Source: Mytilus trossulus (lineage: Eukaryota). From it: a stretch of 64,000 bases of DNA. Shown piece after piece: positions 1 through 34,539 of the stretch. Within the stretch, counting starts at the first letter, position 1. Each line of letters starts with the position of its first letter. The translations under genes were made by a program, and so were the position numbers. Below the pieces are notes generated by a model. It worked only from the letters and a program-made list of their open reading frames with translations, was not told the DNA's origin and did no database searches. The DNA is taken from assembly GCF_036588685.1 (NCBI RefSeq), contig NC_086378.1, forward strand, positions 66,340,001 through 66,404,000, in the 5' to 3' direction.

Positions 1-3000
1 TATATTTACTATGAAGCGTGAAAGAAGATCAAGTTTTACATATTTTGTTAAAATTCTCAAGGTATATAGAACCGAAAGATATTTGTACAGGGTTTGCAAG
101 GTACATATGAATGCCTACTCGTATCAAATATTTTTAGAAAAATCGAACTGTTAATGAAAAGTGTCCACCATGCACTTACATTGTACTATTATTAGAATTA
201 TAGTAGACTAGAATGATATTCAAATTGATGGAAAACATATATACATGTAACTGTTATTTTAATATAATATATAATAACAAATCAGTGTATACTTATATAC
301 TTCAATATAATAGTTATTACGGTGAAGTTGAATTTCCTGACATTTATTCATCATCCCCGCACAAACTTGTCTCAGAAAAAATATATCTCTATACATTAAC
401 CTCAGTTTCACTTAAAGAGATATGTGATTTTTTTTTTAGACAAGTGCTCTTGACCATCCAGTAGAATTTGTGGTCATCCGATTTAAAGCACGTCAGATCT
501 TTGATTAATAACTCGTTATTACTATTTACATTCCAGTGCACGTTTTTTCGTATTCTTTTGACACAGCGTTTCCACTCGGACTTGCGGTTTGCGTTGATCG
601 AATTTCTAACGAGTAACTAATGATAGTATCGGCGAATGACGAAAGATTTGGACAGTGTAAACTCTGTTTTCTACAAACAAATTTGCGTACATATGATTCA
701 TAGTAAAACGCCACCACTCAAGTTAATAAAACATATTCACCTTTCTCCTTGATGTTTTAAATAATTTAGATTCCAGTTAATAATGGATTATTGAAGGATC
801 AATATAATCACGTCAGAGAATTTGGTTAAGGCGTTATTAATTAATCAACAACGCTTTTTCATATTGTTATAAAATCTAGAAAAAGAACACCATTATATGT
901 CATATCGATTTTATAGCCATGCTATAATTGTATTTTCTATTAAAAATGTAGGTAGCAATTACACTAGGAGTGTAATTAATATGCTGTACTCTTTATCTAT
1001 AATTATTATATTCTTGATTGAGTCGCCAGAAGTAGACTCCGTAATCAAATGACCAAGACAATGAATAGTTGTCTTCAGTTTATTTACTGTGCTTTTTGTA
1101 ATCAACCTAACACAGAACAAAAATAACATAAAAGGAAGAAAGATACAACCCAGGAAATAAAGAAAAATAAATGAAATTGTGGTAAGATTTTGAAAGCTTT
1201 ATACTTTTACTACTTATAATTTTTTTCTTTCTATAGTTCAGTACCTAACGGTAAAAAAGAATTAACACTTATGACAAAAGGAATCGTTCTCTATTGTGAA
1301 TTTTACTACATTTAGACTGGTGTGTTTCTTTGGTCCCTTCTCATAGAGTGTATATATTTAGTAATCATAAATAACTTTCCTATATTTGCTCAAAGATACA
1401 AAGATTTGCTGTGGAATTCTTATAAAAATATCCTAATTTGACGGTAATTGTGTTTATTAAGCATGGCGCATGGTATGATAATTGAACTACCATCTATGTA
1501 AACAGTATTGATAATTTGACTAAGCTTATTTCTTCAAGGATAACCAGTTTTATTTGCTAATTGAAAATTAAGCGGAATAAAATAATTTAAGACTGCAGAG
1601 AAGATAATTCTGTTTAATTGGTTATTACTAACCGACTTAAATAAAAGAGTGAGCTATTATTACTGTAAATGTATAATGTCTCTAGTCTGGTCAAAGAGTC
1701 AGAGTGTCCTACTTAATTAAACGATAAATTGTTGAAATTAGATAACTTGTTTTCACGTGCAGAGAAATTTCTTTTATGTCCAATGCATGACCGGATATCA
1801 TCTTTCTTATTGGTCAATGGCATTGCGGGTCAGCACGAGTTCACGTGTAAGTGCATTGTGGTCACTTCCTTTTATCATCAGTATTTGATGTGTTAACTTG
1901 TGATTCTTATCAAACAATTTGTTCAAAATTCACACCCACATACCGCCCTTTATTTTATCTTTTGAAGTAGATATGTATATATGTTTATTTATGGGGCAGG
2001 TTTTTCTCCCCACCTTTGCTATTCTTTGTCATTTATTCAATTGACATGATATTAGTTGATGTAATTTCGTAGTAATTATGTATTATTATTTCATATTAAA
2101 TATGAATTTTTATGTCAAATGTTTTATTTGCAAAATGTATTTTTTGCATTTTATGATTTTGAATAAATGACCTTTTTTTTCGTCATTTTTATTGATTTTG
2201 TTTATAACAAATCTTAAAAATTGCTAAATATATATAATTTGATATTTGAGAACACGTTCGATCATACATTCTGTTGATAATAGTTTTGCATTGTACAGGT
2301 TAATACATTTCGCAGACTTTTAATTACGCATTTAAACTAATTCGATAGATGAGTTCTCTTATATTTGTACTTTATGTCTTTTATTTGAGTAACTTTCGTT
2401 TTGTGTTGCGTAACGAGTTTTTATAATCTCTGATGAGTTCTTTGTTTTAGACGAAAATCATTGTATATGTGATTAAGTTATTTACTGATACCCTATGCAG
2501 TTTCTTTAAATCATATTTATATTGAAAAAAAATACCGAACTCCAAGGGAAATTAATAAAAAGAAAGTCTTTTTCAAATGGAAACATACAAAGCTCAAACA
2601 AATTAAACAGGTGCAAAAGCAACTGTCTAAAAGATTTCCTGACTTACTATATACATTTCCTGATATAGATGTTAATGGTGGATTATAATACAGATCGTAA
2701 TACAGTATTGAACAGAACACGTTTCATACAGAATAATTGTTAATTGAGCTAGACATCTAATGAGCTAATATTTTGTACATATTCTGTTATTATCGGCAAA
2801 ATAATCATAATTGGCCTTGATTAAAATTAATCTTCCACAAACCATCAATCCACATTATACCTACAATAATAGGTAATACAAAAACATAAAACATATTATG
2901 CTGTCACATTTCTATGTCTGGTGCATATTATTGTTAGTATTTTAATATTGGTACGAAAAGAGTTTATCAACTGTACACAAGTTAGTGGTACAAATAAATC

Positions 3001-3867
3001 ATCAGTTTGCATTATCCCCTACTTTAGTGGTTTAGAAATTTCAGTGAATTTAAATCCATTTTTGTGATTTAGGTGTTCCCTTAGATTATGATCTTTAAAT
3101 GCCAATTTTATAAATTTTCCGTTTAGGGACATTTGTTTCTGTAATTTGCATACATACATGTAGATAAATTACTCTTCCTCTTAAAAAATAATTCAGCAGT
3201 GTGCAGTAAAACAGAGCACAAAATCATTAAAAAGCATCTTTGAAATTTATATGCGAAAACTACTCCAGCAATCCGACAAAAGGTTAACAGTTTTATGTTA
3301 CCTGATGTAGTCATCATTTCAGTTTTGACGTAAATATCAATTATATGGTCATTTTTTTAAATTCATTTCTTGTTTGAAAAAGTTTGAATTTTTCGAAAAG
3401 ATAAGGATTTATTTTATCACAGGCATAGATTACCTTAGCTGTATTTGTCACAACGTTTTAAAATGTTTGGTTAACAATGCTCTTTAAATTTGTACTTGTT
3501 TGGCTTCATAACTATTTTGATTATAAGATAAAAGTTTATTTCAATGGCATAACCATGCGTATTTCGATCACCGGATTTTCACGAGAGTTCACTGCATACG
3601 GAAAACATATCGACGAATTATTTACTGGAAACAAACAATTAGAAAAATTAAATACCTTCAAAATTAGGACAGATTATAGAATTTTCTTGAAAAAAAAGTT
3701 TATGTACCTATGTTTTATACAAAACTTTGATTTTTTCAAAAAACTAAGGATTGTCTTATCCCAGGAATAGATTACCTTATCCTTATTTGTCACAACGTTT
3801 TGGGATTTTTGGTTCACAAGGCTCTTCAACTTTGTACTTGTTTGGCTTCGTTACTATTTTGATCGGC

Positions 3868-3911
3868 GCGTCACCGATGAGTCTTATGTAGACGAAACGC
3901 GCGTATGGCGT
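3868..3911 (+). ncRNA. Type I hammerhead ribozyme motif (core U4->C) in a retrozyme-like repeat (~3300-3960)
   Basis: GCGTCA-CCGATGA-GTCT(TATGT)AGAC-GAA-ACGCGCGT-A-TGGCGT. Stem I is GCGTCA/TGGCGT, stem II is GTCT/AGAC, and the minimal stem III is palindromic. Confidence 0.8.
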
Positions 3912-4299
3912 ATCAAATAATAAACCTGATAACGGTTTCTTCTTTACCTTCAAAACTATCATCTTCAAATATTTGATCTGATTTACAAAGTATTTCAGTC
4001 TAAATTTCATATTTCAAATTAACTGTAAAGATGTTTCCATTAAGACCGACAGGTTCATTAAGTAACACACCTTATTTTGTGTACTCTTATTTGACTGTTT
4101 GTCTTTTCATTTCTCAGCAATGGCAATGTCAGTTTATTTTTGATATATGAGTTTTATTGTCTCCTTTGTATCTTTCGGCCCTCTTTTATCTGCATGCATA
4201 CAGTTATTCTTTTGTCAATACAATTAAAGTCTTTCAATCAATTAAAACATCAAGTTGGTGTTAAAAAATATGAAGCAAATGTTATAATAACTTACTTAA

Positions 4300-4892
4300 G
4301 GTGGTATGGGTGCCTTTCGCCATCTTGGATTGTAAAAAACAGAGAATCTAAGGTCCATATTTTCTATCAAATTAGCAAAATTTGATGCAAGAATGCAGAT
4401 ATGTCATGTGTTTTTACATTTAAAAGATGCAATTTATAAGAATATAACTTATAAATATAAATATATGTACAAGTGTAGATTATTTTTGGTTGTTTTTAAA
4501 TATTTTTAAATTGTCATTTTAAGGGGAGGTAACTCTAAAACAGTGCATTTTCTGTTGGATTGTTCATGGAATTTTCCTATTTTGTATTTTAGCCGGAAAA
4601 AACGTACGGTGACCCTATCTTTTCTTTTGATATTATCAAAGTATTGTTTGAAAGCTATATTTTTCTAATTTATTTTACAATTCTATCATTTCGTTTAGTT
4701 TCTATTCACAAAATGGTGTTTTTTTCCTGTATAATCCATACAAAATGTGTCCTTTTGTCACGACCCGTAGCTTGAAAAAATGCACGATGACCTATCATTT
4801 TTATAATATTTTTTAACATGTATCAATAGATACTACATTTTGGCAAAGTATGAACAGATTCTATCATTTTTATTTTAGACTCCCATACCACC
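4300..4892. mobile_element. MITE with TTAA TSD (Kolobok-like non-autonomous)
   Basis: TTAA|GGTGGTATGGG ... CCCATACCACC|TTAA. The paralogous site in unit B (22340-22343) has a single TTAA, i.e. an empty site. Confidence 0.9.
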
Positions 4893-5089
4893 TTAAAAGT
4901 GTTACAATCTTCACTTCTAAAATCACGGCTTCAGTCAGTGCCTTAATTTTCATATTTTTTTTAATTTTTAGTCTAAAATCACTGCTTCAGTGATTTTACA
5001 AAGTCAGTGCCTTAATTTTCATATTTGTTTTAAATTTTTGTATCTATTTTTAAATACAGAAATCACTTGAAAGGGTAATTCTGACATCA

Positions 5090-5578
5090 CTTGGATACAG
5101 GGCTTGCCTTTCCTATCATGATTTTCTTAATAGATGATAGCTGCTCACAAGGAAACTATTAAACAAAGAGTTTCAAATGGTGCCGTTGAACTCATCCCTT
5201 GCCATCATGAGTTGGTTGAGCATATTGACCGTTTCACAGATAATATCGGATATGTTACTTATGCCGTAACTACAATTATATACCCTTCCCCTTTTACGAA
5301 TGTGACCTACCGAATTAAACTATTTAGCGGAAGTGTAATAAAAAAAAGCAACACGACGGGTGCCACATGTGGAGTAGAATCTGCATACCCTTCCACAGCA
5401 TCTGATATCACCCCCAGTGTTTGATTGGGTTCGTATTGCTTAGTCTTTAGTTTGCTATGTTGTGTTTTTTTGTGTACTATTATTTGTCTGTTTTTTTTTA
5501 AATTTTAAGCCATGGCGTTGTCGGTTTATTTATAATCTATGAGTTTGATGTCCCTCTGATACCCTATGTCACTCTCTT
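5090..5578 (+). mobile_element. Family P1 fragment upstream of NIT-GC A (paralog ~22560-23052)
   Basis: Matches the reverse complement of 46578-47080. Confidence 0.65.
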
Positions 5579-5863
5579 GGATAAAAAAGTACTCCTGACT
5601 GTTTTACCAAAAAAGATGGAGAAATGTAAAACTTTTAAGTGTTATGACTATCTTTCATACGACAACTAGTACAGTTCGCGAAAGATGAGGAAAACTTCGA
5701 CAATTGGAATCGTTAGCATGGTTCACACATGTATCTATAATATAAATTTACTCAATGCTCCTTTCGATTGTGTTTTGCGGAAGGATTCAGTCATCTAGCA
5801 ACTTCATATTCTGTTCTTTATTTACAGAAAATACAGAAATCGAAGTCAGCACATATTTGAGAT

Positions 5864-8800
5864 ATGATAAAATATAATAAAAAAGTCAGCATAAGTCCGG
5901 AGTCAGTGATAGAAGTTAGACCTTGCGCTAAAAGTGACAGTAACGAGAATGAAGAGCAAAGTGAAAGCGATGCAGTGGAGGAAGCAAGAGCGTCTGAAAT
6001 CAGAAGTTTATGTAACCACTGGAAAATGTTTGTTGTGATCATCATTCCTATATCAGCAATAATAATGCTCTCTGGAATTTCATTAACTCGAGCATCTAGG
6101 ATCCAACAAAGTACATCATTAGCTATAGAGAATATAGACGACAATTTGAAAATGAGTGAACTGATACAGCATCTACAACGAGAACGAGGCATGTCTACAT
6201 CTTTCATTGGGACATCAAATGTATCATCCGCTATATTAAACAAGCTACATATAATGAGGCAAGAAACAAATACAAGTTTGAACAACATAAAATGGCCTTA
6301 CTTTGGTATTTTTGTAATGAATTCTTATTGGACGAAAGAAGATTTGCTAACATCATTAGCCGAGCATAGAAGGTATGTTGAGAATAGATCTATAAAGATC
6401 CTCTATAATTTAGACTATTATACTACAATTACTCATGCCTTGTTGAAGTATATAGTTCAATCTGTTACTCCATCGGATAGTGCAGCAGTACAACAGATGG
6501 TAGTGGCTAGTGAAGCTCTATTATCACTGACAGATGACATAGGCATCCAAAGAGCTATTGGGACGACATTTTTTACCTCTTGTGGATGGCAATCTACAGA
6601 AATAGAGACGTACTACATGACATTACATGGACGGTCATCAGCGTTTTTAGACACAGCAATACATCATCATAGGAACATTGAAACACAGTTAACACAAAAG
6701 ATTCAAAATTCTGCTTATTTGTCATATTTTGCCGATCAATATTATTCATTTGAATTGTTTAAGGATTATAAAAATATTTGTTCCAAGACGTCACAATATG
6801 AGAGAGAAACAAAAAGTATAAAATGGTTCAGTAATATGACAATATTCATTGATATATTTTTCGAAATTCGACAAGCTATCAACACAGATATACAATCTTT
6901 TTCAGAAGCTATACAGATAGTTGCTCAGTTTGAGTTTAATCTCTTTCTATCTACTTTGATAGCTGTTGTAACAATTAGCGCTATTTTGTTTACTTCGTAT
7001 GTGTACTTTGTTGCCAAAATGACAGGCAATTTATTAAAGTTAGCTGAGAAAGTTAAAAGGAAGACTGAAAAGCTGGCAAAAGAGAAGAACAAGACTGATT
7101 CTCTACTCTACCAGATGTTACCAAAACAAATTGTTAGAAATTTGAAAAAAGGGACGTCATCTATGGCGGAATTGTTCAATGAAGTGACAATATACTTTAG
7201 TGATATTGTAGGATTTACGCAACTAGGAGCTGAAAGTAACCCTATCGAAATTGTTAACTTGCTGAATGACTTATACAGGTATGTTTATTCTTTAGTTTTA
7301 TTAGATAACGTGCTCAAACAGTTTAGAAATCAAGGAAAACTAATTAATAAAATGATGATAGGTAAAATGTAAAAATAATGATTTTGCTATGAAGGAATAA
7401 AAAGTAAGACAAAATACCGAACTTAATGTATACATAGCTTTTAAAAAAATGGTCAATGATACAAACATTTCAGCAGAACATTATGATCATAGCTATTCAT
7501 TAACAAAAATAATCAAGCACAAATGTTAAGTATTTTTTAAGTATCAGAATGTTTCGAGTCGATGAAAAAAAAATCAGTTGCGCTGCGATTATTTGTCAAA
7601 TACTGTTTTACTTGTGGCCATTTTTATAAACGATTGATATACGAAATTTTTAACGACACAACTCTGTTGAAAACCGCCCAATAGAATCACACTGTTCACG
7701 TTATGATTGTATGATTATTGTTCGTATCACGCATTGTACATGGACGGACATTGTAAAGGTGCATTGTGGACATATCGCAATGTGAATATAAAGGTATGTA
7801 GGTCATTTGACTTTTGACATAAACGACAGAAGTAAGAAAAAATATGTAGAGGTTTATTATAACATCATGCGGTTAAGTTTGAAATAGATTACTGTGAGTC
7901 CAATAAATATTAGCAGATGTAGCATGAGTGCCAATGAGACAACACGCCATCCAAGTTATGATTAGTAAAAAATAAACCTATGAAGGTCAAAGTATTGTCT
8001 TCAACACAGAGCCTTAGCTCACACCGCACAGCAAGCTGTAAAGGACAAGGAAAATTAATAATGTACATGTATTCAAATTGGAAAACCAATAGCATGATCT
8101 ATTTAACAAACGAAAAATGAGGAACACTCATGAAACAAATCAACAAACGAAAACCACCGAACACCAGGTTTCTGACTTAGAACAGGTGCAAACAAATGTA
8201 GCAGGTTAAAAAGTTCCAAAATACACTGATCTTTGAATATCACACGCGAAGGGAAATCGTAAAAACTTACTATTCTGATTTTAGTCTACGACATCTGTGT
8301 TATGATAAACACTTATCGGAGACGGTCTTGCACGTATGAAAATAGTCAAAATACAAGATACTGATTTCATTGCACGACACGTGTTATAATCGTGGAAAGT
8401 TATAGATAAGAAAAAAATGTGAGCATCGCTGAAGGTTGATTGTGTTTTGCGATTTAAAAACGATAATTCTCACTTATTATGTAAGAGGGTGTGTAGGGGT
8501 CTTGCATTTCTCTTTTCATTTATTTCATATCTCCATTTTCCTCTACTCCGTCATTTTATTGCACCATTTTCCACTATTCCTTAATTAATAAACCATTTGC
8601 GACTTTGTTTATTATTCATTCTGGCAATTTTATGTTCTTCTTTCAGTTTACTTGACGAATGCATAGATAAATATGATGTTTATAAAGTGGAAACGATTGG
8701 TGATTCTTACATGGTGGCCAGTGGGGTACCGACACCAAATGGAAAGAATCATGCACCGGAAATAGCATTAATGGCCTTGCAAATTCGACAGGAGGTCAAA

Positions 8801-11800
8801 GGGTATACTATTTCACACATGCCGGGTAGAACGCTTCAGATTAGGATAGGACTTAATTCAGGTTGGTTCAAAAATATTACTTTATCAAATGTTTCATTGG
8901 GTTGCTGTTTCGTTGATCTTTATTCGACATCTGTTTGAATTTATTTTCATTGATTATTCATGTTGTATTGTGAGACGTATGTGAATGAAAAGAAAATTCA
9001 AAATACTAATATACTCTTCCGTTTTTCATAACATGTGTTTCATCTATTAAATAAATCAATCGGTTTTATTTTGTTTTAAATCACCACTGCGGTGTTGACA
9101 TAACAAAAAAATTATATGGTCATATTTATAAGTTTACTGTTTGCAAAAGTATGAATTATTCTAAAAACTAAGGCTTTTCTTATCCCATGACCTTAGCCGT
9201 ATTTGGCACATTTTTTGGAATTTTTGGTCATCAATATTCTTCATCTTTGTATGCCCTTCTTTACTTTTTTGATTGAGCGTCACTGATGAGTCTTATGTCG
9301 ACGAAATAATAGCAAGCTATTATGTTCTATTGTATTGTTTAATCGTTTGTTTTTCAGTACTGTATGTCCTTTCCTTTATTTGTATTGTAGTCCTGTCATG
9401 TATTTTGTAATTTTAGTGTTATATATAACATTGCCATAAAAACGGGAGATTTGGCTGCTCACAAAACCACTAAATATGTTTCTACCAATAGTTATTAGCG
9501 TATAAATATAATGGACATCAGTTTACAGATGAGCTAAGATGGTAAAACATAGGATCTAAATTGTTTTCTTCTTCGAAAAAGATGAAATTAAATTTTGACA
9601 AATGTTATCATTCTGTAGATTCATTTATTTTCGTGGGTATCAATTTTCGTGGATTGCTGAAAATTTGTATATTCGTGGATATTTGATTTCGTGGTTTTTT
9701 CAATCGTTGTATACAAAGCTTATTGAAAATATGATATTCGTTCAACATTTGAATTCGTGGTTTACCTGTATCCACGAAACCCACGAAAATTGGTATCAAT
9801 CGAATAATAATGAATCCACAGTATAAAGTTTGATTTAGCTGGATATGACATTTTACTCAGTGTTGGCTCGCGCAATGCATTCCTAAATGGAAACACTTAT
9901 CCTACCAATTTTGATTTTGTTTTTAGTTCATGCTGTTTTTCTAGTTTTATTTCTTATCTGAACTGAAACTCTTCGATATATAAGGTTTGAATTTTACAAC
10001 AAAAAGTATACTTTGATATAAAAAACATGTAAATGCGTTTACTAATTTATATTTTGTCAGAAAGCTATGTGTAAATTGCTATTTTAGTTATATTATCAAA
10101 CGTGAGTTGTCAGCATTAAAATTTTAAGATCATATTAACCTGATCGTTTATCAAAAGAATTTAACATAATTTTGAAAGTCTTAGTTAAAATGGTTTTTTA
10201 TCCTACCGCCTACTTTATAGTAATATTATGTTTGCTTAGTATTACTATGATAAACATTGGTATATTTCAGGACCATGCGTTGCTGGATGTGTTGGCACTA
10301 AAATGCCAAGATATTGTCTGTTTGGTGACACAGTCAATACAGCATCTAGAATGCAGTCTTTCGGCATCGGTAAGCCCACCTTTAATATGTATTGAAATTA
10401 CCTAGCGTCTTAAAAAATCTTACGTTCATTAAAAATGTTTTTGAAATTTTGTGTGATTATGAAAACAGATTGTAAATAAATGCAAGACTCGGCACAATGC
10501 CATGAAAAACAAACATAAGACAAAGGACCAGCGCTTTGATTTCTAATCTCAAAGTCATAGTTTTCAAATCAGAGCAACATATTTCTATCCAACCAAAAGT
10601 TAACAACAATCTCTCGCAATGCCTTGGATAAGTTTTGATTCGAATTGCGTTAAAGATAATGCAAAAACTAAGAGTTTTCTTGTCATACAACACACCGATA
10701 AGGATTAATTTAGGTTAATTCCTACCATAGAGAGGTCATCTGAAACCTGCACTGAAATGAATACTAAAAAAAACATATCTTGATGTGTGAACTTTGGGCT
10801 CTATTAACAATAGTATGGATTTCGTCTGTAAATTTAAGCCAATCATTCATTAAAGATTTTTCTAAATTACCATTCCAATAAATTTAAACAAAATCTGAGT
10901 ATGCGATGTTGCTTTAAAGCTGTTATCAACAACACACATAGCTGATTTAATAACGTATGTATAATTGTTACAAAATGTGATATGAATTTTATTTACAATG
11001 TTAGAATACTTTTTGAATAATTAGAAATTGCATCTCTTTAAAATAAAGTAAAATGAATGAATCGGAAATAAAACTAATTTCTACTTTGAAACAAAACCCC
11101 TTCAACCAGATGAAATAGCAATGAAATTTCTTAAAAAAAAGATTTTTAACAGAGATAGTGCAGTTATATTTCAGTTTTAATTCATATTGTTAAAGGGTGC
11201 AGATCATCAAATACCTGAATGAGTGCTGCATGGAAATGAAAAATCTGGTAAAAGGTAAAATCACAAAAAAATGAACTCCGAACTTCTACATTACAAAATT
11301 ATGTATTAACAAAACAAACAAACACAATAGGTAAAAATGTCAAAATAGGGGTATAACAGTGTTAGTATCTTAATAATTTAAAAAAATATATATTACACAA
11401 AAGTGCAAAAAATCACACAGACAAATCACACGCACATTGAAAGACACGAATACAAATAAATACCATAGCATAGCATAGTAACACAATGATTGGATATATA
11501 AGTACCAAGCCCCGTCAAATGAATATCACCAAAAATAGAGTAAAAAATAAAAGTAATATTAAAAAAGACAAATTAAAGAAAACTACTTAACGGTATAAAG
11601 ACGATAATTAATGTCAGAATCAAAAATCTGTACTTTAAGCCAATCGTGTGAAGTCAATACGGAATATTTACCAACAATGGCTTGGTGCCTTCCGATTAAC
11701 TTAGAAAAAGGACGTAACGTTCTATGACATAGTCATGTTTCCTCTTCTTTCTACTCATACACTGGTTACGTTTTACAATGCCTGATAAGCTGCTGCAAGC

Positions 11801-14465
11801 TCGTCAATATGAAATAAGTTTAAAGATGTATATCCCATATGCAGGTGAAGTTGGTATATTGCTTCTAAGGTTGGAAAATAATTTCAAAACTAAAATCGCG
11901 TGTTTGTAATAGGTTCTGGAATTGAGATGACCGTGTATGTCAAATACGAGGCATAAGACTTAAAATGACATGTTAGATGGAGCAGTTTATGTACCAACAG
12001 AACGTGCATACGATGTATTTATCTCCCAATTGATACAATATTTCGTATCATGATTTCCTTGATAGATTTGATACTTGCAAGGAAGCTTTATCCTAAGAGT
12101 TCCAACTGGTGAAGTTAAAATCATCCCTTCTAAAATTCAGTGGACGCCATCACGAGTTGGTTGACTGTTATTGAATATCCGTTTCACAGATAATATCGGA
12201 TATGTTCTTACAATCACGTTCCTTTTTACCGAATGTGACCTACCGAATCAGACTATTAACCAAGTTTTTTATAACATGAGCAACACGATGGGGGCCGAAT
12301 GTGGAACAGGATCTGATTACCCTTCCGGATAACCTAAGATCAACCCCGGTATTTGGTGGGGTTCGAGTGGCTTGGTCTTTAGTTATCTATTTTGTGACTT
12401 GTCTGTGTGTTTCTTCTTAATTAGCTATGGCGTTTTCAGTTTACTTTCAATCTATACATTTGACTGTCCCTCTGTTGTCGTTTGCTGTTGTTTCTTTAAT
12501 TTTCTAGTTCTTTGGATTATATTAATTAAACTCAATCAGAAAAGTTTGGATTGTAAATGTAAAGATCATCACCAATACATCTGAACGTGAAATCAATTTC
12601 CTGGCTTCTTTAATTTTCTAGTTTTTGTCGGGTGTTTAACCCTTTTAACCCTTTTGCAGCACCTGATATCCTCTTTCTCTCGTTGGGGGTCGTTATTATC
12701 AGTCTAAAAATCTGATGAAATGATTTAGAACTTGTTTGTAGTCGCTTTCAATTTCATACCATGACGTTATATATTTTTTCGTCGACTTACGGATTTTGAT
12801 TATTTATTTGGTACACAAACCATTTTAGGCGGCCATGGTCATTTTAACAAAATAGTCTTTGATGTTTACTAAGACCGCCATGGAAATCTTTGTAATGTAA
12901 TTATTTTAATTTTATTGTAGGTGGAAAGATACATATAAGTAGTGTTACGCAAGAAATCTTGAGCCATAATGGGAATTTTATAACAGAGTTCAGAGGTCTT
13001 ATTGATGTAAAGGTAATAATTTATGTTCCTTTCCCGGATTTTTTTTATTCATCTGATCGGGCGGAGCTTACGTTTATTCTGCAAAAGATCAGTATATTTG
13101 AAGATGTATACTAGTATATGTAATAAGTTCCATTACCTTTATAATTATAATACTGATTTCTAATAAGTGTCATCAAACAGATATAAAAAAGAGCTGAGGG
13201 TACACTATGGGATGCATAGAATAGTTTGAATTTATAACATTTGAATGGGATATAGCCAGTGGCTATAGCAGAGAATTTTAAAGTATAAGATATTGTAGTA
13301 TTCTGTTTAAAACCTTAAGATTGTGAGACTAATTGTAAACGTGATTTATAAAATTTTGCTTGAAAAAAAATACTATCAATAAAATTGAGTATGGGAATGG
13401 AGAATGTGTCAAAGAGACAACAACCCAAAAACTATTTTCCTTCCTTAAAAATTATTTTCACAACTTACTACCCCTTGCACTTCCATAAAAAGGCATTCGG
13501 GATATGAAAAAAATAAAATAAAGTATACCAAAACTATATATAGTAAGGACATATGCACATTTTGCAACTGGTGTTGTGTCGTTATAGCATTACTTTTATA
13601 TCCACAAACTCTAAATAGTTATCAAAGGTACCAGGATTATAATTTAGTACGTCAGACGCGCGTTTTATCTACATAAAACTAATCAGTGAGGCTAATATCA
13701 AAATATTTATTAAGCCAAACAAGTAAAAAATTGAAGAGTATTAGGATCCAAAATTCCAAAAATTGTGCCGAAAACGGCTAAGGTAATATATGCCTGGGAT
13801 GAGAAAATCCTTAGTTCTAAAATGTTATAATTTTAACATGATTTTCAACTCCGTTTTCAAAACCATCAACGTCCGTGTCTCTTTGTCTTTTTTTGCAAAT
13901 ACACATAAACAAACTGTTTGCACATTTCAACTTGATAAATTACCATTACTCTGGACACTTAATCGATAGGTTTATTCCAAAACACCTGCCTAGTCTGGTC
14001 TATGATGAGCGAGCCGGTTAAACTCCATTCAGTCAAGTTAAATAAAGTAAAAATACATGTTTGGCCTTAAAACTATATGACTTGTCCATACCCGTTAACT
14101 TACAATTTAGAAAAGAGCTCAAATGAACACTTTCAAATATCAAATTAAAGAAATATAGGTACATCAAACATGTTGTTTTTGTTATTTGTTACGATACTCT
14201 AGTTCAAAACTGAATCACTCGTCATCCTTTAGAAAAGAAGCACGACTGTTTTTGCTAGAATTCGGTCCCGAAAGACATTTATTGTTGAATGCGCATCTGG
14301 AGCAGATATGTTTGTATCGATGATTTAATTAGCTGTTGGTTACAGCTAGGGAGTAACACAAGACTAAAATGAAATTCCACACTAACAATCTGTGTATCTT
14401 TATAGGGAAAAGGACAAATGGCTACATATTGGTTGGAGAAATTCCAAGTTGGCAAACATGTGTAA
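5864..14465 (+). CDS. NIT-domain receptor guanylyl cyclase (NIT-GC), copy A; exons 5864-7278, 8647-8861, 10271-10369, 12921-13012, 14406-14465; 626 aa
   Basis: All introns are GT..AG with matching phases (1415+215+99+92+60=1881 nt). Domain order: TM1 ([20 protein letters not shown]), NIT-like motifs [12 protein letters not shown] and [11 protein letters not shown]2 ([24 protein letters not shown]), signalling helix [14 protein letters not shown], then a class III cyclase domain: [66 protein letters not shown]. The GC-specific Glu (ETIGD) and Cys (RYCLF) are present. Confidence 0.93.
9085..9306 (+). mobile_element. Retrozyme-like repeat fragment with 3'-truncated hammerhead (9277-9306), intron 2 of NIT-GC A
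   Basis: GCGTCA-CTGATGA-GTCTTATGTCGAC-GAAA, then unrelated sequence. The upstream body matches the ~3700-3870 repeat. Confidence 0.75.
9613..9821. mobile_element. Short MITE (Tc1/mariner-like) with internal TTCGTGG repeats
   Basis: CTGTAGATTCATT ... AATGAATCCACAG|TA inverted ends, with multiple TTCGTGG/CCACGAA motifs. Confidence 0.7.
11255..11945 (-). mobile_element. Second Penelope-like family (P2) 3' fragment (paralog ~28250-28990); shorter UTR-only copies at ~2528, 16585, 20570, 33680, 47900, 51680, 54360
   Basis: The minus strand gives [34 protein letters not shown]. The long UTR is shared among many copies (aactccgagg..cctaatcaaatggcaaaatc..aactgtcatattcctgacttgg). Confidence 0.6.
11980..12495 (+). 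mobile_element. Family P1 fragment in intron 3 (paralog ~29025-29450)
   Basis: [35 protein letters not shown] plus the UTR. Confidence 0.65.
13600..13820 (-). mobile_element. Retrozyme-like repeat with degenerate hammerhead (13649-13692), intron 4 of NIT-GC A
   Basis: The reverse complement reads GCCTCA-CTGATTA-GTTT(TATGT)AGAT-AAAACGCGCGTC-TGACGT, plus the repeat body. Confidence 0.75.
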
Positions 14466-17400
14466 GGCATTCCATACATCATTCACAGCATCAATATGTT
14501 CTCAAATATTAGAGTCGCACGTGAGAGACATTCTGATCAAGCCAAAGCTGTAAACAAAATCAGACAAGTGCCTAGTCATGTATAATGTTTGTTCACTATT
14601 TGTGTTTTATAATTATGTAATTTTGTTTTAGATAATTGCTTATTAAACATTTATATGCATATTTGAAGATCAATGATTTACAATGTACTATGTATTACTG
14701 CAAAATAATCAAAAATAATCAGCTGAACAAATTAAAACACTTTCATTTTATATTAATGCTACTCAAATTACATATTGCATATGGAGAAATGTTGTATTAA
14801 TGATATAGCCTGGCCTGGTCTGTCAAACCGAATTTTTACTAGATTGTGTTAAAACAAACTTTAATCAGTCAGGATTCTACTTCATCAAAATTATCTCCCC
14901 ATTACGCCAGTTCATTTTTACAACTGTAGAAATTGACGTCATTTTAGGGATGACACGCTGCCAATTTAAGCTCTTGAAAAATAAATTAAAATTAAAAGTT
15001 AATGTTCCTGTCTGCTTTCAGTCAACTTTAAACTATTGTTTGATCTGTTGTCAGGTAGAATTTTCGAAAATTCATCTAAAAACAACTAAATATTTCGAAG
15101 AAGGGCAGACTAAAAATGTTCAGTGATTGAATACTGTAGACCCTAATTTTCACACATAATTCTTTTTCGAAGATATGCATTTCAGCATCCAACTTAAAAG
15201 ACTGTCGTCAAGTACTTTAAATAAAAACTAGCTATTCGAACACACCTATCCTGTTTTTGTGATTAATTAGAAAGGTATTTCACTTGACCCATATATTTTA
15301 TCTTTTAGTACTGTGAATTTCTTATGATGTTATAAAGTCAATCTGTAGCCTTGATATATATAAATGATAGAATCTGAAGCGAGATGATGTATAAAATACT
15401 CTTGTGTTACAGTGTAAACCAATGTTTTTGATTTTTTTTAAGTCACATAATGGAAGGGCAGACTCGAATAATTACTATTTGATCGATATGTTCTGCGTCT
15501 GTGGTATTTTTTTTTTTAAATCGGAGGCTAGGCATTTTCTACATTCATCTTCATAGATATCTATGGTGTCGACTTGATATATTGTTCTGCTTAACTTTGT
15601 AATATATATATATTGTAAACTTATGCAAATAATGTTTTTAAAATAAAATGCTTCGTAATTGAGCAGAAAATTTCATTTTATTTCTTTTCATAAACTTTAA
15701 AAAAAATATTACTATAGTAAACATTACAGTAAGCGAAGCATTTATCGCCTTCTCTAACAAATATCTTCGTTTTTTTGTTCTATTTCAACTGGGGTTTCGC
15801 CTGTAATGCATAAAGCTATCTACCTACTTTGGGCTTTTTTTTTAAATCAATAATGTATATCAACTTTCAAACTGAAGTAAAATAAATTATAAGAAGCGGA
15901 ATGGCAGAAATTTAAAGGAACAGTCAGATCTATTGACTTCACCTCTCACATAAAATACAGTAAAATATAATTTGTGTTACCTATAGTAGTCATCATTCCC
16001 GTTTGAAGGGTTGTACAGTTGTCATTTATGGGCCTTTTACAGATTGCTGTTCGGTGTAAGCCAAGTCTCATTGTTGAAGAACGTACTTTGACTTATAATT
16101 GATTACTTCTGACTTGGATTGAGAGTTTTTCTCATCTGCACTTATACCACATCTTCTTATATCTATCATTACATGATTCTTAAATTAAATACAATGACGC
16201 GATGACTAACACAGATTGAATTATAGATATGCATAGAAGAGATATTAATATTTTATCGTGTTTATTACGTCTTTGTTGACACCTTATATCTATCTGAACA
16301 TCTAATTGTCATAGCATATTCTTTACAAAGTTAACACTATTTAAATGAGATAGTCACGAACAACGCAAATCGGTCAATAAAAAGGCTTGAGTGGGAAGAG
16401 TTAATATAGACGTCAAATAATGTATAGTTGTATTAAATGTTTGGTGTGATAATCCATATGATATTGTCAGCTTCAGAAAAAAAGATTGTATATTCGGGTA
16501 CACTTAATACACTTACATTTTCATAGCCTAATTTCGTTCCACTCTGCTTTTTTTAGTATCGGTTTCGACTTAGTAAAAAAAGGATCAAAATCACAAAAAT
16601 ACTGAAATCCGATGAAAAGTATAAAAGGGAAGTTCCTAATCAAATGGCAAAATCCAAAGGTCAAACACATCAAACGAATGGATAACAAATGTACTATTTT
16701 CAACTTGATACAGATATGTTCTTGTGTAGAAAATGGTGAAATAAATCTGATTTTAAAGCTTGATAAACCCCTCACTTGTATGCATATGACAGTCGAATGT
16801 CATTATATTGACAACCACGTGTAAACAAAACAAACAGACATAATAGCAAAAGGATTCAAAATAGGGATACAGCAGTCAACATGATGTTATATTCCTCATC
16901 ATTATAAAACAAACAAACGATGTTAAATACATGTATCAATATTCTGATCACAAGCGTTATAAAAAAGTTGATCAAAAAGTGCATGCAAGGCGAAACCTAT
17001 AGACCATAGCAAATAAGAACAGACTATTTGAAGTGTTTTGTCAATCTTGAGTATTATTCTAATGTTGTTGCATTCATTTGCATAATTTGACTACCTGCAT
17101 ACCAAGGTATTCACTTCAGGGACTATTGAAATGATTCACACATGCGTTGTTCACTGATCTCAGTTTAATCCAGGAAACTGATAAATACTGACAAAAAATG
17201 TAAATCATGCATCCAACGAAAAATTAAATTTACTTATCAATTGCATCAAATTTCATTGAAAGTCAAAATTTACTCTTTGCAAGTCTTCGTCATATACACA
17301 TTCTACAGGTGTGGCGTGTGAAATGATATACCTAGCACTGACAATATTCAACGGAAATACTTCTGCGAACGAAGAAATTACAAAATAAAGTTGACTTTAA

Positions 17401-17559
17401 TTGCCGTCGAAAAGCCTTCTTTTTGTCAACGAAAAACTGTATAACATAAAATTATCCTTTATTCCTACCATAACGGCAAGGATGAAAATGCAGTTAGCTA
17501 AAGATTGAAACAGAAGGATATAATGGTAGTGGTTTACTGGGTGGAATGTCTGAATGATG

Positions 17560-18612
17560 CTATGTAAACGTATAAGAATTACTAGTTAAAGATTAGTTAT
17601 ATATCCAGATGCTAGAAGTCGAATTAGCATAAAAACACAAGTTAGAAATTACACGCAGTTTTTTTGTGTTTCGGCAAATACATTATCCACTTGAATAAAA
17701 AATGTGAATACGTGAGAAGCGTAACAACAAAGTGATCTTGCACCTGAAAGAATACGAATATAACCACAACTTATGAAACGTTTAATACGCTTTACTAAAA
17801 TGGATTAAAAGTGTTAGAGATGAACACTTACTTTACGTATTGCAGGTCGAATTCAAACAAAAAGCAGAGGAATCTACCAAAAAACAAGACCACTAAGAAT
17901 ATGAATGCAGTAATGGTTGGCTTGATTGTTTAAAGAATCAACACATCACATTTAAGTAAATTCTAGAGAAGCTTCATCTGTTGATGGTTACAGTCAAGCT
18001 ATGAACGATTGGGTAACAATAATGAAAAGCATAATGGCAGCAATAACGCCGGACAACATCTTTACACTGTTTATTCCAAGACTTTGCTTTTTTCTAAATT
18101 GTTGCAAGAATAAACTTAATGAGTGTCAATGTGTAGATTGTCACGTGTGGAGCAGGATCTGCTTACCCTTCCTGAGTAGCTATGATCATCTCCAGTTTAT
18201 GTGGGGTTCGTGATGTATAGTCTTTAGTTTTCTATGTTGAATCTTGTGTACTATTGATTTTCTTGTGTCTTTTTCCTTTTTTTAGCCAAGGTGTTGTCAG
18301 TTTATTTTTTTATTTTTTTTTATTAATTGTTCCTCTGGTGTTTTTGTCCCTCTTTTGTATCGGTATTGAAAGGAGAGGCTAACAGTCTCCGGTTCTGTGA
18401 AAGTCCAAATGCTATTTTGTTTTTGTAATTCAGATAACCAAAGGTACTTTTAAAATTGTCAAATCGCTACTTACACAGTATAAGGCAACAAAACAAGCAT
18501 GGATGACATAAAAACCTTTATCAATTGGTTAAACAAGCTTGACAAGAATGTTTAACGGCAGCAACGGAAAGTAGCAATAATGATTGACCACTACCCTGCC
18601 ATCCGCACGTCA
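17560..18612 (+). mobile_element. Tigger/pogo (CENP-B-like) transposase fossil: N-terminal HTH plus part of DDE, interrupted at ~18140-18355
   Basis: Frame-broken translation: QQSDLAPERIRI, LLKWIKSVRDEHL, QKAEE..ECSNGWLDCLK, EASSVD..W..PDNIF, KERLTV, QYKATKQAWMT, FINWLNKLDK..RKVAIMIDH.PA. Confidence 0.8.
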
Positions 18613-21600
18613 AATATTTATAAATTTTCCGTTTAGTGACATTTGTTTCTGTAATTTGCATACATGATAAATTACTCTTCCTCTTATAAAATAATTCATC
18701 AGTGTGCAGTAAAAAAGAGCACAAAAGCATTAAAAAGCATCTTTGAAATTTATATGCGAAAACTACTCCAGCAATCCGACAAAAGTTAACAGTTTTATAT
18801 TAACTGATGTAGTCATCATTTCAGTGTTGACATAAATATTAATTATATGGTCATTTTTTTAAATACATTTCTTATTTGAAAAAGTTTGAATTTTTCGAAA
18901 AAATAAGGATTTTATCACAGGCATAGATTACCTTAGCTGTATTTGTCACAACGTTTTAAAATGTTTGGTTAACAATGCTCTTTAACTTTGTTATTGTTTG
19001 GATTCATAACTATTTTGATTTCACTTAAAGAGATATGTGATTTTTTTTTAGACAAGTGCTCTTGACCATCCACTAGAATTTGTGGTCATCCGATTTAAAG
19101 CACGTCAGATCTTTGATTAATAACTCGTTATTACTATTTACATTCCAGTGCACGTTTTTTCGTATTCTTTTGACACAGCGTTTCCACTCGGACTTGCGGT
19201 TTGCGTTGATCGAATTTCGAACGAGTAACTAATGATAGTATCGGCGAATGACAATAATTCAATATCAGTACATTTATAAAGATTTGGACAGTGTAAACTC
19301 TGTTTTCTACAAACAAATTTGCGTACATACGATTCATAGTAAAACGCCAACACTCAAGTTAATAAAACATATTCAACTTTCTCCTTGATTTTTAAAATGA
19401 TTTAGATTCCAGTTAATAATGGATTATTGAAGGAACAATATAATCACGTCAGAGAATTTGGTTAAGGCGTTATTAATTAATCAACAACGCTTTTTCATAT
19501 TGTTATAAAATCTAGAAAAAGAACACCATTATATGTCATATAGATTTTATAGACATGCTATAATTGTATTTTCTATTAAAATGTAGGTAGCAATTACACT
19601 AGGAGTGTAAATAATATGCTGTACTTTTTATCTATAATTATTATATTCTTGATTGAGTCGACAGAAGTAGACTTCGTAATCAAATGACCAATACAATGAA
19701 AAGTTGTCTTCAGTTTATTTACTGTGCTTTTTGTAAGCAACTTAACACAGAACAAAAATAACGTAGAAGGAAGAAAGATACAACCCAGGAACTAAAGAAA
19801 AATAAATGAAATTGTGGTAAGATTTTAAAAGCTTTATACTTTTACTACTTATATTTTTTTTCTTTCTATAGTTCAGTATCTAACGGTAAAAAAGAATTAA
19901 CACTTACGACAAAAGGAATCGTTCTCTATTGTGAATTTTACTACATTTAGACTGGTGTGTTCCTTTGGTCCCTTCTCATAGAGTGTATATATTTAGTAAT
20001 CATAAATAACTTCTCTATATTTGCTCAAAGATACAAAGATTTGCTGTGAAATTCTTATAAAAATATCCTAATTTGACGGTAATTGTGTTTATTAAGCATG
20101 GAGCATGGTATGACAATTGAACTACCATCTATGTAAACAGTATTGATAATTTGACTAAGCTTATTTCTTCAAGGATATCATTTTAACACGCAATTAAAAC
20201 TTTGAAAAAGGATTTTTATCTGCAGTTTTATTGATTTTGTTTATAACAAATCTTAAAAAATTGCTAAATATATATAATTTGATATTTGAGAACACGTTCG
20301 ATCATACATTCTGTTGATAATAGTTTTGCATTGTACAGGTTAATACATTTCGCAGACTTTTAATTACGCATTTAAACTTAATTCGATTGATGAGTTCTCC
20401 TTTATTTGTACTTTATGTCTTTTATTTGAGTAACTTTCGTTTTGTGTTGCGTAACGAGTTTTTAGAATCTCTGATGAGATCTTTCTTTTTAGACGAAAAT
20501 CATGGTATATGTGATTAAGTTATTTACTGATACCCTATGCAGTTTCTTTAAATCATATTCATATTGAAAAAAAATACCGAACTCCAAGGAAAATTAAGAA
20601 AAAGAAAGTCTTTTTCAAATGGAAACATACAAAGCTCAAACAAATTAAACAGGTGCAAAAACAACTGTCTAAAAGATTTCCTGACGTATTACATTTCCTG
20701 ATATTGATGTTAATGGTGGATTAAACCAGTCGGTTATAATACAGATCGTAATACAGTATTGAAAAGAACACGTTTCATACAGAATAATTGGTAAATGAGC
20801 TAGACATCTAATGAGCTAATATTTTGTATATATTCTGTTATTATCGGCAAAATAATCATAATTGGCCTTGATTAAAATTAATCTTCCACAACCCATCAAT
20901 CCACATTATACCTACAATAATAGGTAATACAAAAACATAAAACATAATATGCTGTCACATTTCTATGTCTGGTGCATATTATTGTTAGTATTTTAATATT
21001 GGTACGAAAAGAGTTTATCAACTGTACACAAGTTAGTGGTACAAATAAATCATCAGTTTGCATTATCCCCTACTTTAGTGGTTTAGAAATTTCAGTGAAT
21101 TTAAATCCATTTTTGTGATTTAGGTGTTCCCTTAGATTATGATCTTTAAATGCAAATTTTATAAATTTTCCGTTTAGTGACATTTGTTTCTGTAATTTAC
21201 ATACATAGATAAATTACTCTTCCTCTTATAAAATAATTCATCAGTGTGCAGTAAAAAAGAGCACAAAAGCATTTAAAAACATCTTTGAAATTCATATGCG
21301 AAAACTACTCCAGCAATCCGACAAAAGGGTAATAGTTTTATGTTACCTGATGTAGTCATCATTTCAGTGTTGACATAAATATTAATTATATGGTCATGTT
21401 TTTAAATACATTTCTTGTTTGAAAAAGTTTGAATTTTTCGAAAAGATAAGGATTTATTTTATCACAGGCATAGATTACCTTAGCTGTATTTGTCACAACG
21501 TTTTAAAATGTTTTGTTAACAATGCTCTTTAACTTTGTACTTGTTTGGCTTCATAACTATTTTGATTATAAGATAAAAGTTTATGTCAATGGCATAACCA

Positions 21601-21911
21601 TGCGTATTTCGATCACCGGATTTTCACGAGAGTTCAATGCATACGGAAAACATATCGACGAATTGTTTACTGGAAGCAAACAATTAGAAAAAGTAAATAC
21701 CTTCAAAATTAGGACAGATTATAGAATTTTCTTGAAAAAAAGTTTATGTACCTATGTTTTATACAAAACTTTGATTTTTTCAAAAAACTAAGGATTGTCT
21801 TATCCCAGGAATAGAATACCTTATCCTTATTTGTCACAACGTTTTGGGATTTTTGGTTCACAAGGCTCTTCAACTTTGTACTTGTTTGGCTTCGTAACTA
21901 TTTTGATCGGC

Positions 21912-21955
21912 GCGTCACTGATGAGTCTTAGGTAGATGAAACGCGCGTATGGCGT
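21912..21955 (+). ncRNA. Type I hammerhead ribozyme motif, intact CUGAUGA/GAAA core, in a retrozyme-like repeat (~21340-22000)
   Basis: GCGTCA-CTGATGA-GTCT(TAGGT)AGAT-GAA-ACGCGCGT-A-TGGCGT. Cleavage triplet GUA; the stem II closing pair is G-U. Confidence 0.82.
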
Positions 21956-34400: not shown

Positions 34401-34539
34401 AAAGCCTTCTTTTTTCATAAAAAAACTGTAAAACATAAAATCTGATATTATCCCTACCATACTGACACGGATGAAAAATGAAGTTGGCTAAAGATTGAAA
34501 TATAATGATATAATGGTAGTGTTTTATTGGTGGAATTTC

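What the first reader, a model, noticed from the sequence alone, without database searches (positions are those of the whole stretch)
5864..14465. Animal guanylyl cyclase built like a bacterial chemoreceptor: TM-NIT-TM-cyclase, no kinase-homology domain
Seen: two hydrophobic helices flank a ~285-aa loop carrying LQRERGMS and GIQRAIG. The loop has N-glycosylation sequons (NVS, NTS, NRS, NMT) and two Cys, and is followed directly by a signalling helix and a cyclase domain with both metal Asp, the catalytic N/R and the GC-specific E/C. Known: bacterial NIT domains (NasR, NIT chemoreceptors) use paired Q-x-E-R-G and G-x-E-R-A helices to bind nitrate/nitrite, and NIT-domain GCs are reported in some invertebrates (e.g. 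Platynereis, placozoans) as unconventional NO-linked cyclases. Inference: a homodimeric cell-surface sensor of external nitrate, nitrite or NO producing cGMP in a probable bivalve. The E->Q change in the second motif may alter ligand preference. Automated annotation would probably call it natriuretic-peptide-receptor-like.
Basis: partly seen in the sequence, partly recalled or inferred. Interest (0 to 1): 0.85.

Follow-up and report, generated by a model that had tools for sequence, protein, structure and literature searches.

The report
Mussel NIT-domain guanylyl cyclase gene pair
This is a real, intact mussel gene (with a near-identical tandem twin) for a membrane guanylyl cyclase whose outer sensor is a bacterial-type NIT domain. 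It belongs to an animal family described since 2006 and shown in a worm to respond to nitric oxide, so it is a correct reading but not a new kind of protein.

Summary
Window 5864-14465 (+) is a five-exon GT-AG gene. Its product is identical to Mytilus trossulus XP_063443302.1 (626 aa).

**Architecture.** The order is cytoplasmic tail, TM1, NIT domain (Pfam PF08376, E 9e-19, full-length profile), TM2, signalling helix, class III cyclase. There is no kinase-homology, ANF-receptor or H-NOX domain.
- The predicted NIT fold (pLDDT 92) matches only NasR 4AKK strongly (Z 24.5).
- Arg108 and Arg230 align with the Arg of NasR's two matching motifs (LQCER, GQERALG).
- All cyclase catalytic and guanine-specifying residues are present, so a homodimer could be active.

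**Prior description.** The architecture is already published:
- Anantharaman et al. 2006 (insects, sea urchins).
- Moroz et al. 2020 (placozoans and bilaterians, molluscs included).
- Jokura et al. (Platynereis NIT-GC1 makes cGMP after an NO donor and needs its NIT domain).

**Added here.**
- An intact tandem twin lies at 23337-31488, with 15 aa differences.
- The genome holds at least 15 NIT loci.
- The gene sits in a subclade shared with annelids, echinoderms and hemichordates, marked by a co-occurring Cys pair.
- The second-motif Gln is typical of that subclade, not special to this gene.

The parts
5864..7278 (+). Copy A exon 1 (aa 1-471 plus 2 nt): cytoplasmic tail, TM1, the whole NIT domain, TM2, signalling helix and the start of the cyclase domain (metal Asp447 at 7202-7204)
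   Evidence: The open frame and the donor AG|GTATGT are visible. The translation is 100% identical to P0001 aa 1-471.
8647..8861 (+). Copy A exon 2 (aa 472-544): cyclase core with Glu487 (8690-8692), Asp491 (8702-8704) and Arg538 (8843-8845)
   Evidence: Exact exon mapping to P0001 with AG/GT borders. Pfam Guanylate_cyc E 6.5e-18 on this frame.
10271..10369 (+). Copy A exon 3 (aa 544-577): Cys559 (10315-10317), Asn566 (10336-10338) and Arg570 (10348-10350)
12921..13012 (+). Copy A exon 4 (aa 577-607): cyclase domain
14406..14465 (+). Copy A exon 5 (aa 608-626 plus the TAA stop): end of the cyclase domain
6026..6088 (+). TM1 (aa ~55-75), a signal-anchor helix continuous with the first NIT helix
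   Evidence: Hydropathy peak of 2.6. AF2 predicts a single helix over aa 54-116 (NIT-region model) and 30-116 (full-length model).
6158..6895 (+). NIT domain (aa 99-344): two four-helix bundles
   Evidence: Pfam PF08376 E 9.2e-19, profile 1-239 of 239. AF2 pLDDT 92.3. NasR 4AKK by Foldseek E 2.2e-5, and by VIA Z 24.5. The own-genome scan hits the same coordinates.
6173..6196 (+). Motif 1, LQRERGMS (aa 104-111). Gln105, Glu107 and Arg108 are invariant in 34 full-length family members
   Evidence: It aligns with LQCER of NasR.
6542..6562 (+). Motif 2, GIQRAIG (aa 227-233). Arg230 aligns with the Arg of NasR's GQERALG. Position 229 is Gln here, where NasR has Glu
6581..6781 (+). Cys240 (6581-6583) and Cys306 (6779-6781): the only two Cys in the loop and a candidate disulfide
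   Evidence: In alignment A2, 40 of 79 rows have both Cys, 39 have neither and none has only one. This is largely one clade, so few independent events lie behind it.
6935..7015 (+). TM2 (aa ~358-384)
   Evidence: Hydropathy peak of 2.2. It is followed by a net +10 charge in aa 383-430. It lies inside one predicted helix spanning aa 311-418.
7016..7153 (+). Signalling helix / coiled-coil linker (aa ~385-430)
   Evidence: Pfam HNOBA positions 175-216 of 216 match aa 386-427. It aligns to the linker of NPR-A. The helix is continuous with TM2.
7169..14438 (+). Class III cyclase catalytic domain (aa 436-618), split over exons 1-5
   Evidence: Pfam PF00211 E 5.9e-64. The best solved relative is NPR-A at 265 bits.
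23337..31488 (+). Copy B, an intact tandem paralogue. Exons: 23337-24751, 26097-26311, 27269-27367, 29880-29971, 31429-31488. 626 aa with 15 aa and 21 nt differences from copy A
   Evidence: Exon 1 is 100% identical to P0121 = XP_063442631.1. It has the same Pfam domains.
406..35243 (.). Two units of a ~17.5-kb tandem segmental duplication (406-18306 and 19019-35243), each carrying one NIT-GC gene
   Evidence: Self-BLAST gives 80-98% identity in collinear blocks. Intron divergence is 1.5% (introns 1-2), 5.9% (intron 3) and 11.3% (intron 4).

Best explanation
The locus encodes a member of the animal NIT-domain guanylyl cyclase family (NIT-GC). It is a two-pass membrane receptor cyclase present here as two tandem, nearly identical genes in Mytilus trossulus.

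Shown:
- A short disordered N-terminal tail is followed by TM1, which runs straight into the first helix of a NasR-type NIT domain (two four-helix bundles).
- The last NIT helix runs without a break through TM2 into a signalling helix, which abuts a class III cyclase domain.
- The cyclase domain carries every metal-binding, transition-state and guanine-specifying residue.

Inferred:
- The cyclase needs cytosolic GTP, and the segment after TM2 is strongly basic. The N and C termini are therefore cytosolic, and the NIT domain faces outward (extracellular or lumenal).
- The protein works as a homodimer, since class III cyclases form their active sites at a dimer interface and nothing is missing from this chain.
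- A small nitrogen-oxide species binds between the two bundles at Arg108/Arg230. Candidates are nitrite or nitrate, or NO or a product formed from it.
- The resulting helix displacement passes along the NIT-TM2-S-helix rod, as in bacterial chemoreceptors and sensor kinases, and raises cGMP synthesis.

Family membership is about 0.97 likely. A nitrogen-oxide ligand is about 0.5-0.6 likely.
For: - Gene model and identity.
- Domains.
- NIT fold and Arg pair.
- Continuous helices (54-116 and 311-418).
- Two TM segments only, and a net +10 charge after TM2.
- Catalytic residues, and closest solved relative NPR-A (265 bits).
- Family-wide invariance of Gln105, Glu107 and Arg108.
- Placement inside the NIT-GC clade, with kinase-domain receptor GCs as outgroup (SH-aLRT 100).
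- Literature: Anantharaman et al. 2006 proposed NIT + S-helix + cyclase proteins as receptors for extracellular nitrogen oxides (PMC1592074). Moroz et al. 2020 described TM-NIT-TM-GC in placozoans and many bilaterians, including molluscs (PMC7400543). Platynereis NIT-GC1 makes cGMP after the NO donor SNAP, and only with its NIT domain (bioRxiv 10.1101/2023.08.02.551600).
Against:
- A bacterial NIT domain (PA4520) bound neither nitrate nor nitrite, and its authors suggest NIT is a superfamily with differing ligands (PMC6381276).
- The Platynereis assay cannot separate NO from nitrite or nitrate. I could not place NIT-GC1 on my tree.
- The Mytilus subclade sits on a long stem branch (1.0 changes per column).
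- The two copies differ at pN/pS 0.79 in exon 1, based on only 16 differences. This gives no proof of purifying selection since the duplication.
- His542 of the near-invariant RIGxHxG motif is Asn here.
Confidence: 0.7

Rival explanations
1. Same protein and same transmembrane mechanism, but the NIT domain of this Mytilus subclade binds something other than a nitrogen oxide. That could be another small anion or metabolite. The N-oxide label would then be merely inherited from the Pfam name.
For: - The NIT domain of PA4520 does not bind nitrate or nitrite, and NIT chemoreceptors of P. putida and P. fluorescens gave no or only minor nitrate taxis.
- The Mytilus group has a long stem branch.
- These NIT domains are only 15-23% identical to the other Mytilus NIT paralogues.
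- Gln replaces the Glu of the G-x-E-R motif.
Against: - Both Arg aligned to NasR's two motif Arg are kept, and Q-x-E-R is invariant.
- The one animal member tested responds to an NO donor through its NIT domain.
Confidence: 0.2
2. An internal NO-pathway receptor rather than an environmental sensor. The protein would sit in neuronal, ciliary or organelle membranes and read NO (or its oxidation products) made by the animal's own NOS, as in Platynereis photoreceptor cells. It would not read seawater nitrate.
For: - Platynereis NIT-GC1 and NIT-GC2 act in ciliary photoreceptor cells downstream of NOS interneurons.
- Placozoan tissue holds micromolar nitrite that depends on NOS.
Against: Nothing in the sequence separates this reading from external sensing, and tissue expression was not obtainable. 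It is a variant of the best explanation, not a contradiction of it.
Confidence: 0.35
3. One of the two copies is not a working gene. Copy B could be an assembly artefact (uncollapsed haplotype placed in tandem), or one copy could be silent and drifting.
For: - The copies are 98.9% identical in coding sequence, with pN/pS near 0.8 in exon 1.
- Mytilus genomes are very heterozygous (my own knowledge).
Against: - Both frames and all splice sites are intact.
- The units differ by a 452-bp length difference in intron 2 and by 6-11% in introns 3-4. That mosaic fits true paralogues with conversion of the 5' half better than alleles.
- There are no N gaps in the window.
- RefSeq annotates both copies.
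Confidence: 0.1

Closest known systems
Animal NIT-domain guanylyl cyclases (NIT-GC): noted by Anantharaman, Balaji & Aravind 2006; Moroz et al. 2020; Platynereis NIT-GC1 and NIT-GC2 (Jokura et al.)
   Same: - Same Pfam domains (NIT, HNOBA tail, cyclase). The TM-NIT-TM order matches Moroz's description.
- No kinase-homology domain.
- The cyclase is of the receptor-GC (NPR) type.
- It nests inside the family in a tree rooted on kinase-domain GCs.

   Different: - It belongs to a subclade (bivalves, annelids, echinoderm, hemichordates) with a co-occurring Cys240/Cys306 pair, usually with Gln before the second Arg.
- Arthropod and gastropod members have lost that Arg (Met, Ile or others). Other Mytilus paralogues keep G-x-E-R and lack the Cys pair.
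- Orthology to the tested Platynereis NIT-GC1 was not established.
NasR NIT domain (Klebsiella oxytoca nitrate/nitrite-responsive antiterminator, PDB 4AKK)
   Same: - Same double four-helix-bundle fold (Z 24.5, rmsd 3.3 A over 265 aa).
- It is the only PDB sequence hit of the Mytilus NIT profile (E 3.4e-4).
- Both Arg-bearing motifs align.

   Different: - Only 14% identity.
- NasR is soluble and cytoplasmic, and its output is an ANTAR RNA-binding domain.
- Here the domain is inserted between two TM helices and drives a cyclase.
- The second motif has Gln instead of Glu.
Receptor guanylyl cyclases of the natriuretic-peptide type (NPR-A/GC-A, GC-C)
   Same: The signalling helix plus cyclase domain align end to end (aa 391-617, 265 bits) and share the same catalytic residues.
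   Different: - No ANF-receptor ectodomain and no kinase-homology domain.
- Two TM helices instead of one.
- The N-terminus is predicted to be cytosolic.
Bacterial NIT-domain chemoreceptors and sensor kinases (e.g. PA4520; PscF)
   Same: Both have a periplasmic or exoplasmic NIT sensor held between two TM helices. The second TM helix continues into a cytoplasmic signalling helix.
   Different: - The output is a eukaryotic-type GC, not an MCP or kinase module.
- The ligand of PA4520 is unknown and is not nitrate or nitrite.
Soluble guanylyl cyclase beta-2 (the name RefSeq gives both copies)
   Same: The coiled-coil tail of HNOBA and the cyclase domain are shared.
   Different: - No H-NOX (HNOB) haem domain, and no PAS-like part of HNOBA.
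- It has two TM helices.
- The cyclase domain scores far higher against NPR-A (265 bits) than against sGC beta-1 (147 bits).
- The name is therefore misleading.

Membership tests
Animal NIT-GC family | NIT domain (PF08376) above Pfam's gathering score | tested here: met
   68-69 bits against a cut-off of 24.9; E 9e-19; the full profile is covered.
Animal NIT-GC family | NIT domain flanked by two transmembrane helices | tested here: met
   There are exactly two hydropathy peaks, at aa 55-75 and 358-384. AF2 predicts helices continuous with NIT alpha-1 and alpha-8. No dedicated topology predictor was available.
Animal NIT-GC family | C-terminal signalling helix plus class III cyclase with GC-type specificity residues, and no kinase-homology domain | tested here: met
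   HNOBA tail at 386-427 and PF00211 at E 6e-64. E487 and C559 are present. No kinase hit even at E up to 1.
Animal NIT-GC family | Groups with other NIT-GCs rather than with kinase-domain receptor GCs | tested here: met
   The NIT-GC clade is separated from the four outgroup GCs with SH-aLRT 100 (quick IQ-TREE, 45 rows).
Animal NIT-GC family | NIT-dependent cGMP production in response to NO, nitrite or nitrate | not testable with these tools
   Shown only for Platynereis NIT-GC1 with SNAP.
NIT domain (NasR type) | Two consecutive four-helix bundles | tested here: met
   The AF2 model has pLDDT 92.3. The 4AKK match is Z 24.5 over 265 aa, and the next hit is Z 10.9.
NIT domain (NasR type) | Conserved Arg in each bundle's interface helix (Q-x-E-R and G-x-E-R-A motifs) | tested here: met
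   R108 and R230 align with the Arg of NasR's LQCER and GQERALG. The Glu of the second motif is Gln here.
NIT domain (NasR type) | Binds nitrate or nitrite | not testable with these tools
   This is not universal even in bacteria: PA4520 is negative.
Natriuretic-peptide-type receptor GC | ANF-receptor ectodomain and kinase-homology domain | tested here: not met
   Neither domain was found by Pfam at E up to 1.
Soluble GC beta subunit | N-terminal H-NOX haem domain, and no membrane anchor | tested here: not met
   There is no HNOB hit, only the last 42 positions of HNOBA match, and there are two TM helices.

The most novel reading that the evidence does not exclude
The Cys-pair / G-I-Q-R subclade, to which these two mussel genes belong, could be a true external chemoreceptor for dissolved nitrate or nitrite on water-exposed epithelia. 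That would give a filter feeder a direct cGMP read-out of seawater nitrogen load, as distinct from the neuronal NO-feedback role shown in Platynereis. The recent tandem duplication would be part of a lineage-specific tuning of that sense.
Probability: 0.12. Interest if true: 0.7.

Novelty: new member of a known kind. Interest (0 to 1): 0.27.

Why it matters
NIT-GCs are the least understood class of animal guanylyl cyclases. They are absent from vertebrates. Only one member has been assayed, and its true ligand (NO, nitrite or nitrate) is unresolved.

A compact, well-defined mussel member is a convenient construct for ligand screening and for Arg-mutant tests:
- It is 626 aa long.
- The sensor, both TM helices and the signalling helix lie in a single exon.
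- Both conserved Arg are intact.
- The NIT model is confident.

The genome-wide count and the three-clade split suggest that family members may not all share one ligand. One clade keeps both Arg plus a Cys pair, one has the canonical G-x-E-R, and one has lost the second Arg.

Practically, RefSeq's name 'soluble subunit beta-2-like' is wrong for a two-pass membrane protein that lacks H-NOX.

None of this changes the picture already in the literature.

Tried and rejected
- **Single-sequence PDB search.** phmmer of the loop (aa 79-359) against PDB sequences found nothing at E up to 10. A profile of ten Mytilus NIT domains was needed to reach NasR.
- **Expression.** No RNA evidence, splice confirmation by reads or tissue pattern could be obtained, and read laying was therefore not used.
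- **Rfam.** The scan of the whole window at gathering thresholds gave 0 matches. It therefore gave no support to another note's hammerhead or retrozyme claim.
- **Kinase, ANF-receptor or H-NOX domains.** I considered that these were hidden below threshold. Pfam at E up to 1 shows none.
- **Bacterial contamination or a horizontally acquired intronless gene.** Rejected. The gene has four GT-AG introns and the same ~32% G+C as its surroundings, and it sits on a 91-Mb chromosome-scale contig.
- **Glycosylation sequons as evidence of an extracellular loop.** Not used as such. Four in 282 aa is close to the chance expectation, and one lies in a conserved structural motif.
- **Cys240/Cys306 as a proven disulfide.** Not claimed. 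Co-occurrence is perfect (40 both, 39 neither) but mostly reflects one clade.
- **Homodimer prediction.** Complex prediction was not run. Class III cyclases are obligate dimers, and a pass would not have separated homo- from heterodimers with paralogues.
- **Orthology to Platynereis NIT-GC1.** Not resolved. No accession is given in the paper, and I did not type sequences in.
- **Spliced model.** I never joined the exons and sent them to a tool. The identical database protein P0001 was used instead, after checking each exon against it by reference.

Full report
**1. What is there**

The open frame starting at 5864 runs for 502 codons and reads through a donor site at 7278/7279. A search with the exon-1 translation returned a 626-aa Mytilus trossulus protein (P0001, XP_063443302.1) at 100% identity.

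I mapped that protein back exon by exon. This gives five exons, all with AG/GT borders, and a stop ending at 14465:
- 5864-7278
- 8647-8861
- 10271-10369
- 12921-13012
- 14406-14465

The identical database entry served instead.

**2. Domains**

Pfam gives the following:
- NIT (PF08376) at aa 99-344, covering positions 1-239 of 239 in the profile, E about 1e-18.
- The last 42 positions of HNOBA at aa 386-427. This is the coiled-coil signalling helix.
- Guanylate_cyc at aa 436-618, E 6e-64.
- No kinase, ANF-receptor or H-NOX match even at E up to 1.

Hydropathy shows only two membrane-length segments, at aa 55-75 and 358-384.

**3. Fold**

An AlphaFold2 model of aa 53-379, built on 79 family sequences, has mean pLDDT 92.3.
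- Foldseek finds NasR (4AKK) as the only significant PDB match: two chains of one entry, E 2e-5 and 7e-5, probability 1.0.
- VIA-align gives Z 24.5 with rmsd 3.3 A over 265 residues. The next entry, TorS, scores Z 10.9.
- A profile of ten Mytilus NIT domains hits only NasR among PDB sequences (E 3.4e-4). It aligns LQRER with NasR's LQCER, and GIQRA with NasR's GQERA.

From memory, these two NasR arginines are R50 and R176 of Boudes et al. 2012; I did not check the numbering. Moroz et al. describe two conserved arginines at the bundle interface.

In the models TM1 is one helix with NIT helix 1. In the full-length model a single helix spans aa 311-418, taking in the last NIT helix, TM2 and the signalling helix.

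**4. Catalysis**

The signalling helix and cyclase domain align end to end with NPR-A (265 bits). This is a better score than any soluble GC or adenylyl cyclase gives.

All of the following are present:
- the metal ligands D447 and D491;
- the guanine-specifying E487 and C559;
- R538, N566 and R570.

Nothing is missing from the chain, so a homodimer can form two complete sites. This is inference from the established architecture of class III cyclases. One departure is Asn at position 542, where at least 90% of the family has His.

**5. Topology (inferred)**

The cyclase must reach cytosolic GTP, and the 48 residues after TM2 carry a net +10 charge. With two TM helices the NIT loop is therefore exoplasmic. 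Whether that means the cell surface, a cilium or an internal compartment cannot be told from sequence.

**6. Family context**

The homologue list spans bivalves, gastropods, a chiton, annelids, nemerteans, echinoderms, hemichordates, a tardigrade, a priapulid, crustaceans, insects, a pycnogonid and placozoans ('NIT domain GCY 2').

A tree rooted on kinase-domain receptor GCs separates the NIT-GCs with full support and shows three bilaterian groups:
- The window gene lies with two other Mytilus species' proteins, a third M. trossulus gene on the same chromosome (P0006), Solemya, two annelids, a sea urchin and three hemichordates.
- The other M. trossulus NIT paralogues lie with the oyster, Owenia and Lineus proteins.
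- Arthropod, gastropod and chiton proteins form the third group.

Motif conservation follows this split:
- Gln105, Glu107 and Arg108 are invariant in the 34 full-length proteins, and present in 78 of the 79 rows of A2 (the remaining row has a gap).
- The second Arg is kept in the first two groups. In the third it is replaced, mostly by Met.
- The first group is further marked by Cys240 plus Cys306. Of the 79 rows, 40 have both and 39 have neither.
- In the first group Gln is the commonest residue before the second Arg, so that Gln (E in NasR) is a subclade trait.

The genome itself has at least 15 NIT matches, on three chromosomes.

**7. The tandem twin**

Self-comparison shows that 406-18306 is repeated at 19019-35243.
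- The second unit carries an intact copy with identical exon lengths and splice sites. It has 21 nucleotide and 15 amino-acid differences.
- Its exon 1 is 100% identical to P0121 = XP_063442631.1, the second 626-aa M. trossulus member of P0001's cluster.
- Divergence is mosaic: 1.5% in introns 1-2, 1.4% at synonymous sites of exon 1, 5.9% in intron 3 and 11.3% in intron 4.
- pN/pS is 0.79 in exon 1, on 16 changes.

I read this as a true duplication whose 5' half was recently homogenised. An assembly artefact is not excluded without reads.

**8. What is already known**

- Anantharaman, Balaji and Aravind (2006) described a third class of animal GC in insects and sea urchins: an extracellular NIT domain, an S-helix and a cyclase. 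They proposed these as receptors for extracellular nitrogen oxides.
- Moroz et al. (2020) described NIT flanked by two TM helices plus a GC domain. They found it in placozoans and in many bilaterians, and named molluscs among the richest.
- The lobster genome paper repeats the finding.
- Jokura et al. showed that Platynereis NIT-GC1 raises cGMP after SNAP only if the NIT domain is present. They state that NO cannot be separated from nitrite or nitrate in that assay.
- On the cautionary side, the NIT domain of P. aeruginosa PA4520 binds neither nitrate nor nitrite.

**9. Verdict**

The ligand and location remain inference, and the kind of protein is already described.

- exact gene models for two copies;
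- the structural match to NasR, with numbers;
- the subclade signature;
- the paralogue count;
- the misleading RefSeq name.

A word search of the scan's own notes for this family returned nothing.

Noticed in passing
window 36422-37567 (-), 40719-41864 (-), 50065-51216 (-): Three intronless open frames of 381-383 aa, each a full-length serpin (PF00079, E about 1e-94). They form a small serpin cluster downstream of the NIT-GC pair.
   Followed up: partly
window 61846-62217 (-): A 123-aa open frame matches the N-terminal part of sugar/MFS transporters (PF00083 E 6e-13). It is probably one exon of a transporter gene that runs off the window.
   Followed up: no
window 5096-5578, 12041-12474, 22578-23031, 42705-43202, 46578-47134, 49097-49505: A dispersed repeat of ~450-500 bp, 66-77% identical between copies, on both strands. 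One copy lies just upstream of each NIT-GC gene and one lies in intron 3 of copy A.
   Followed up: no
window 8947-9399: A ~450-bp stretch in intron 2 of copy A has no counterpart in copy B (intron 2 is 1409 vs 957 bp). It is an insertion or deletion that arose after the duplication.
   Followed up: no
whole window: The Rfam scan at gathering thresholds found no RNA family on either strand. It therefore gives no support at that stringency to another first-stage note's hammerhead-ribozyme repeats near 21912-21955.
   Followed up: partly
G000:C12:5049900-5168346 and C12:15985071-16054898: Five further NIT matches in the same genome cover only the first ~150-160 profile positions within one open frame. 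In these paralogues the NIT domain is either split by an intron or truncated.
   Followed up: no
window 3107-3522, 18611-19020, 21153-21567: A ~410-bp element occurs three times at 93-95% identity. One copy sits at the junction between the two duplication units.
   Followed up: no
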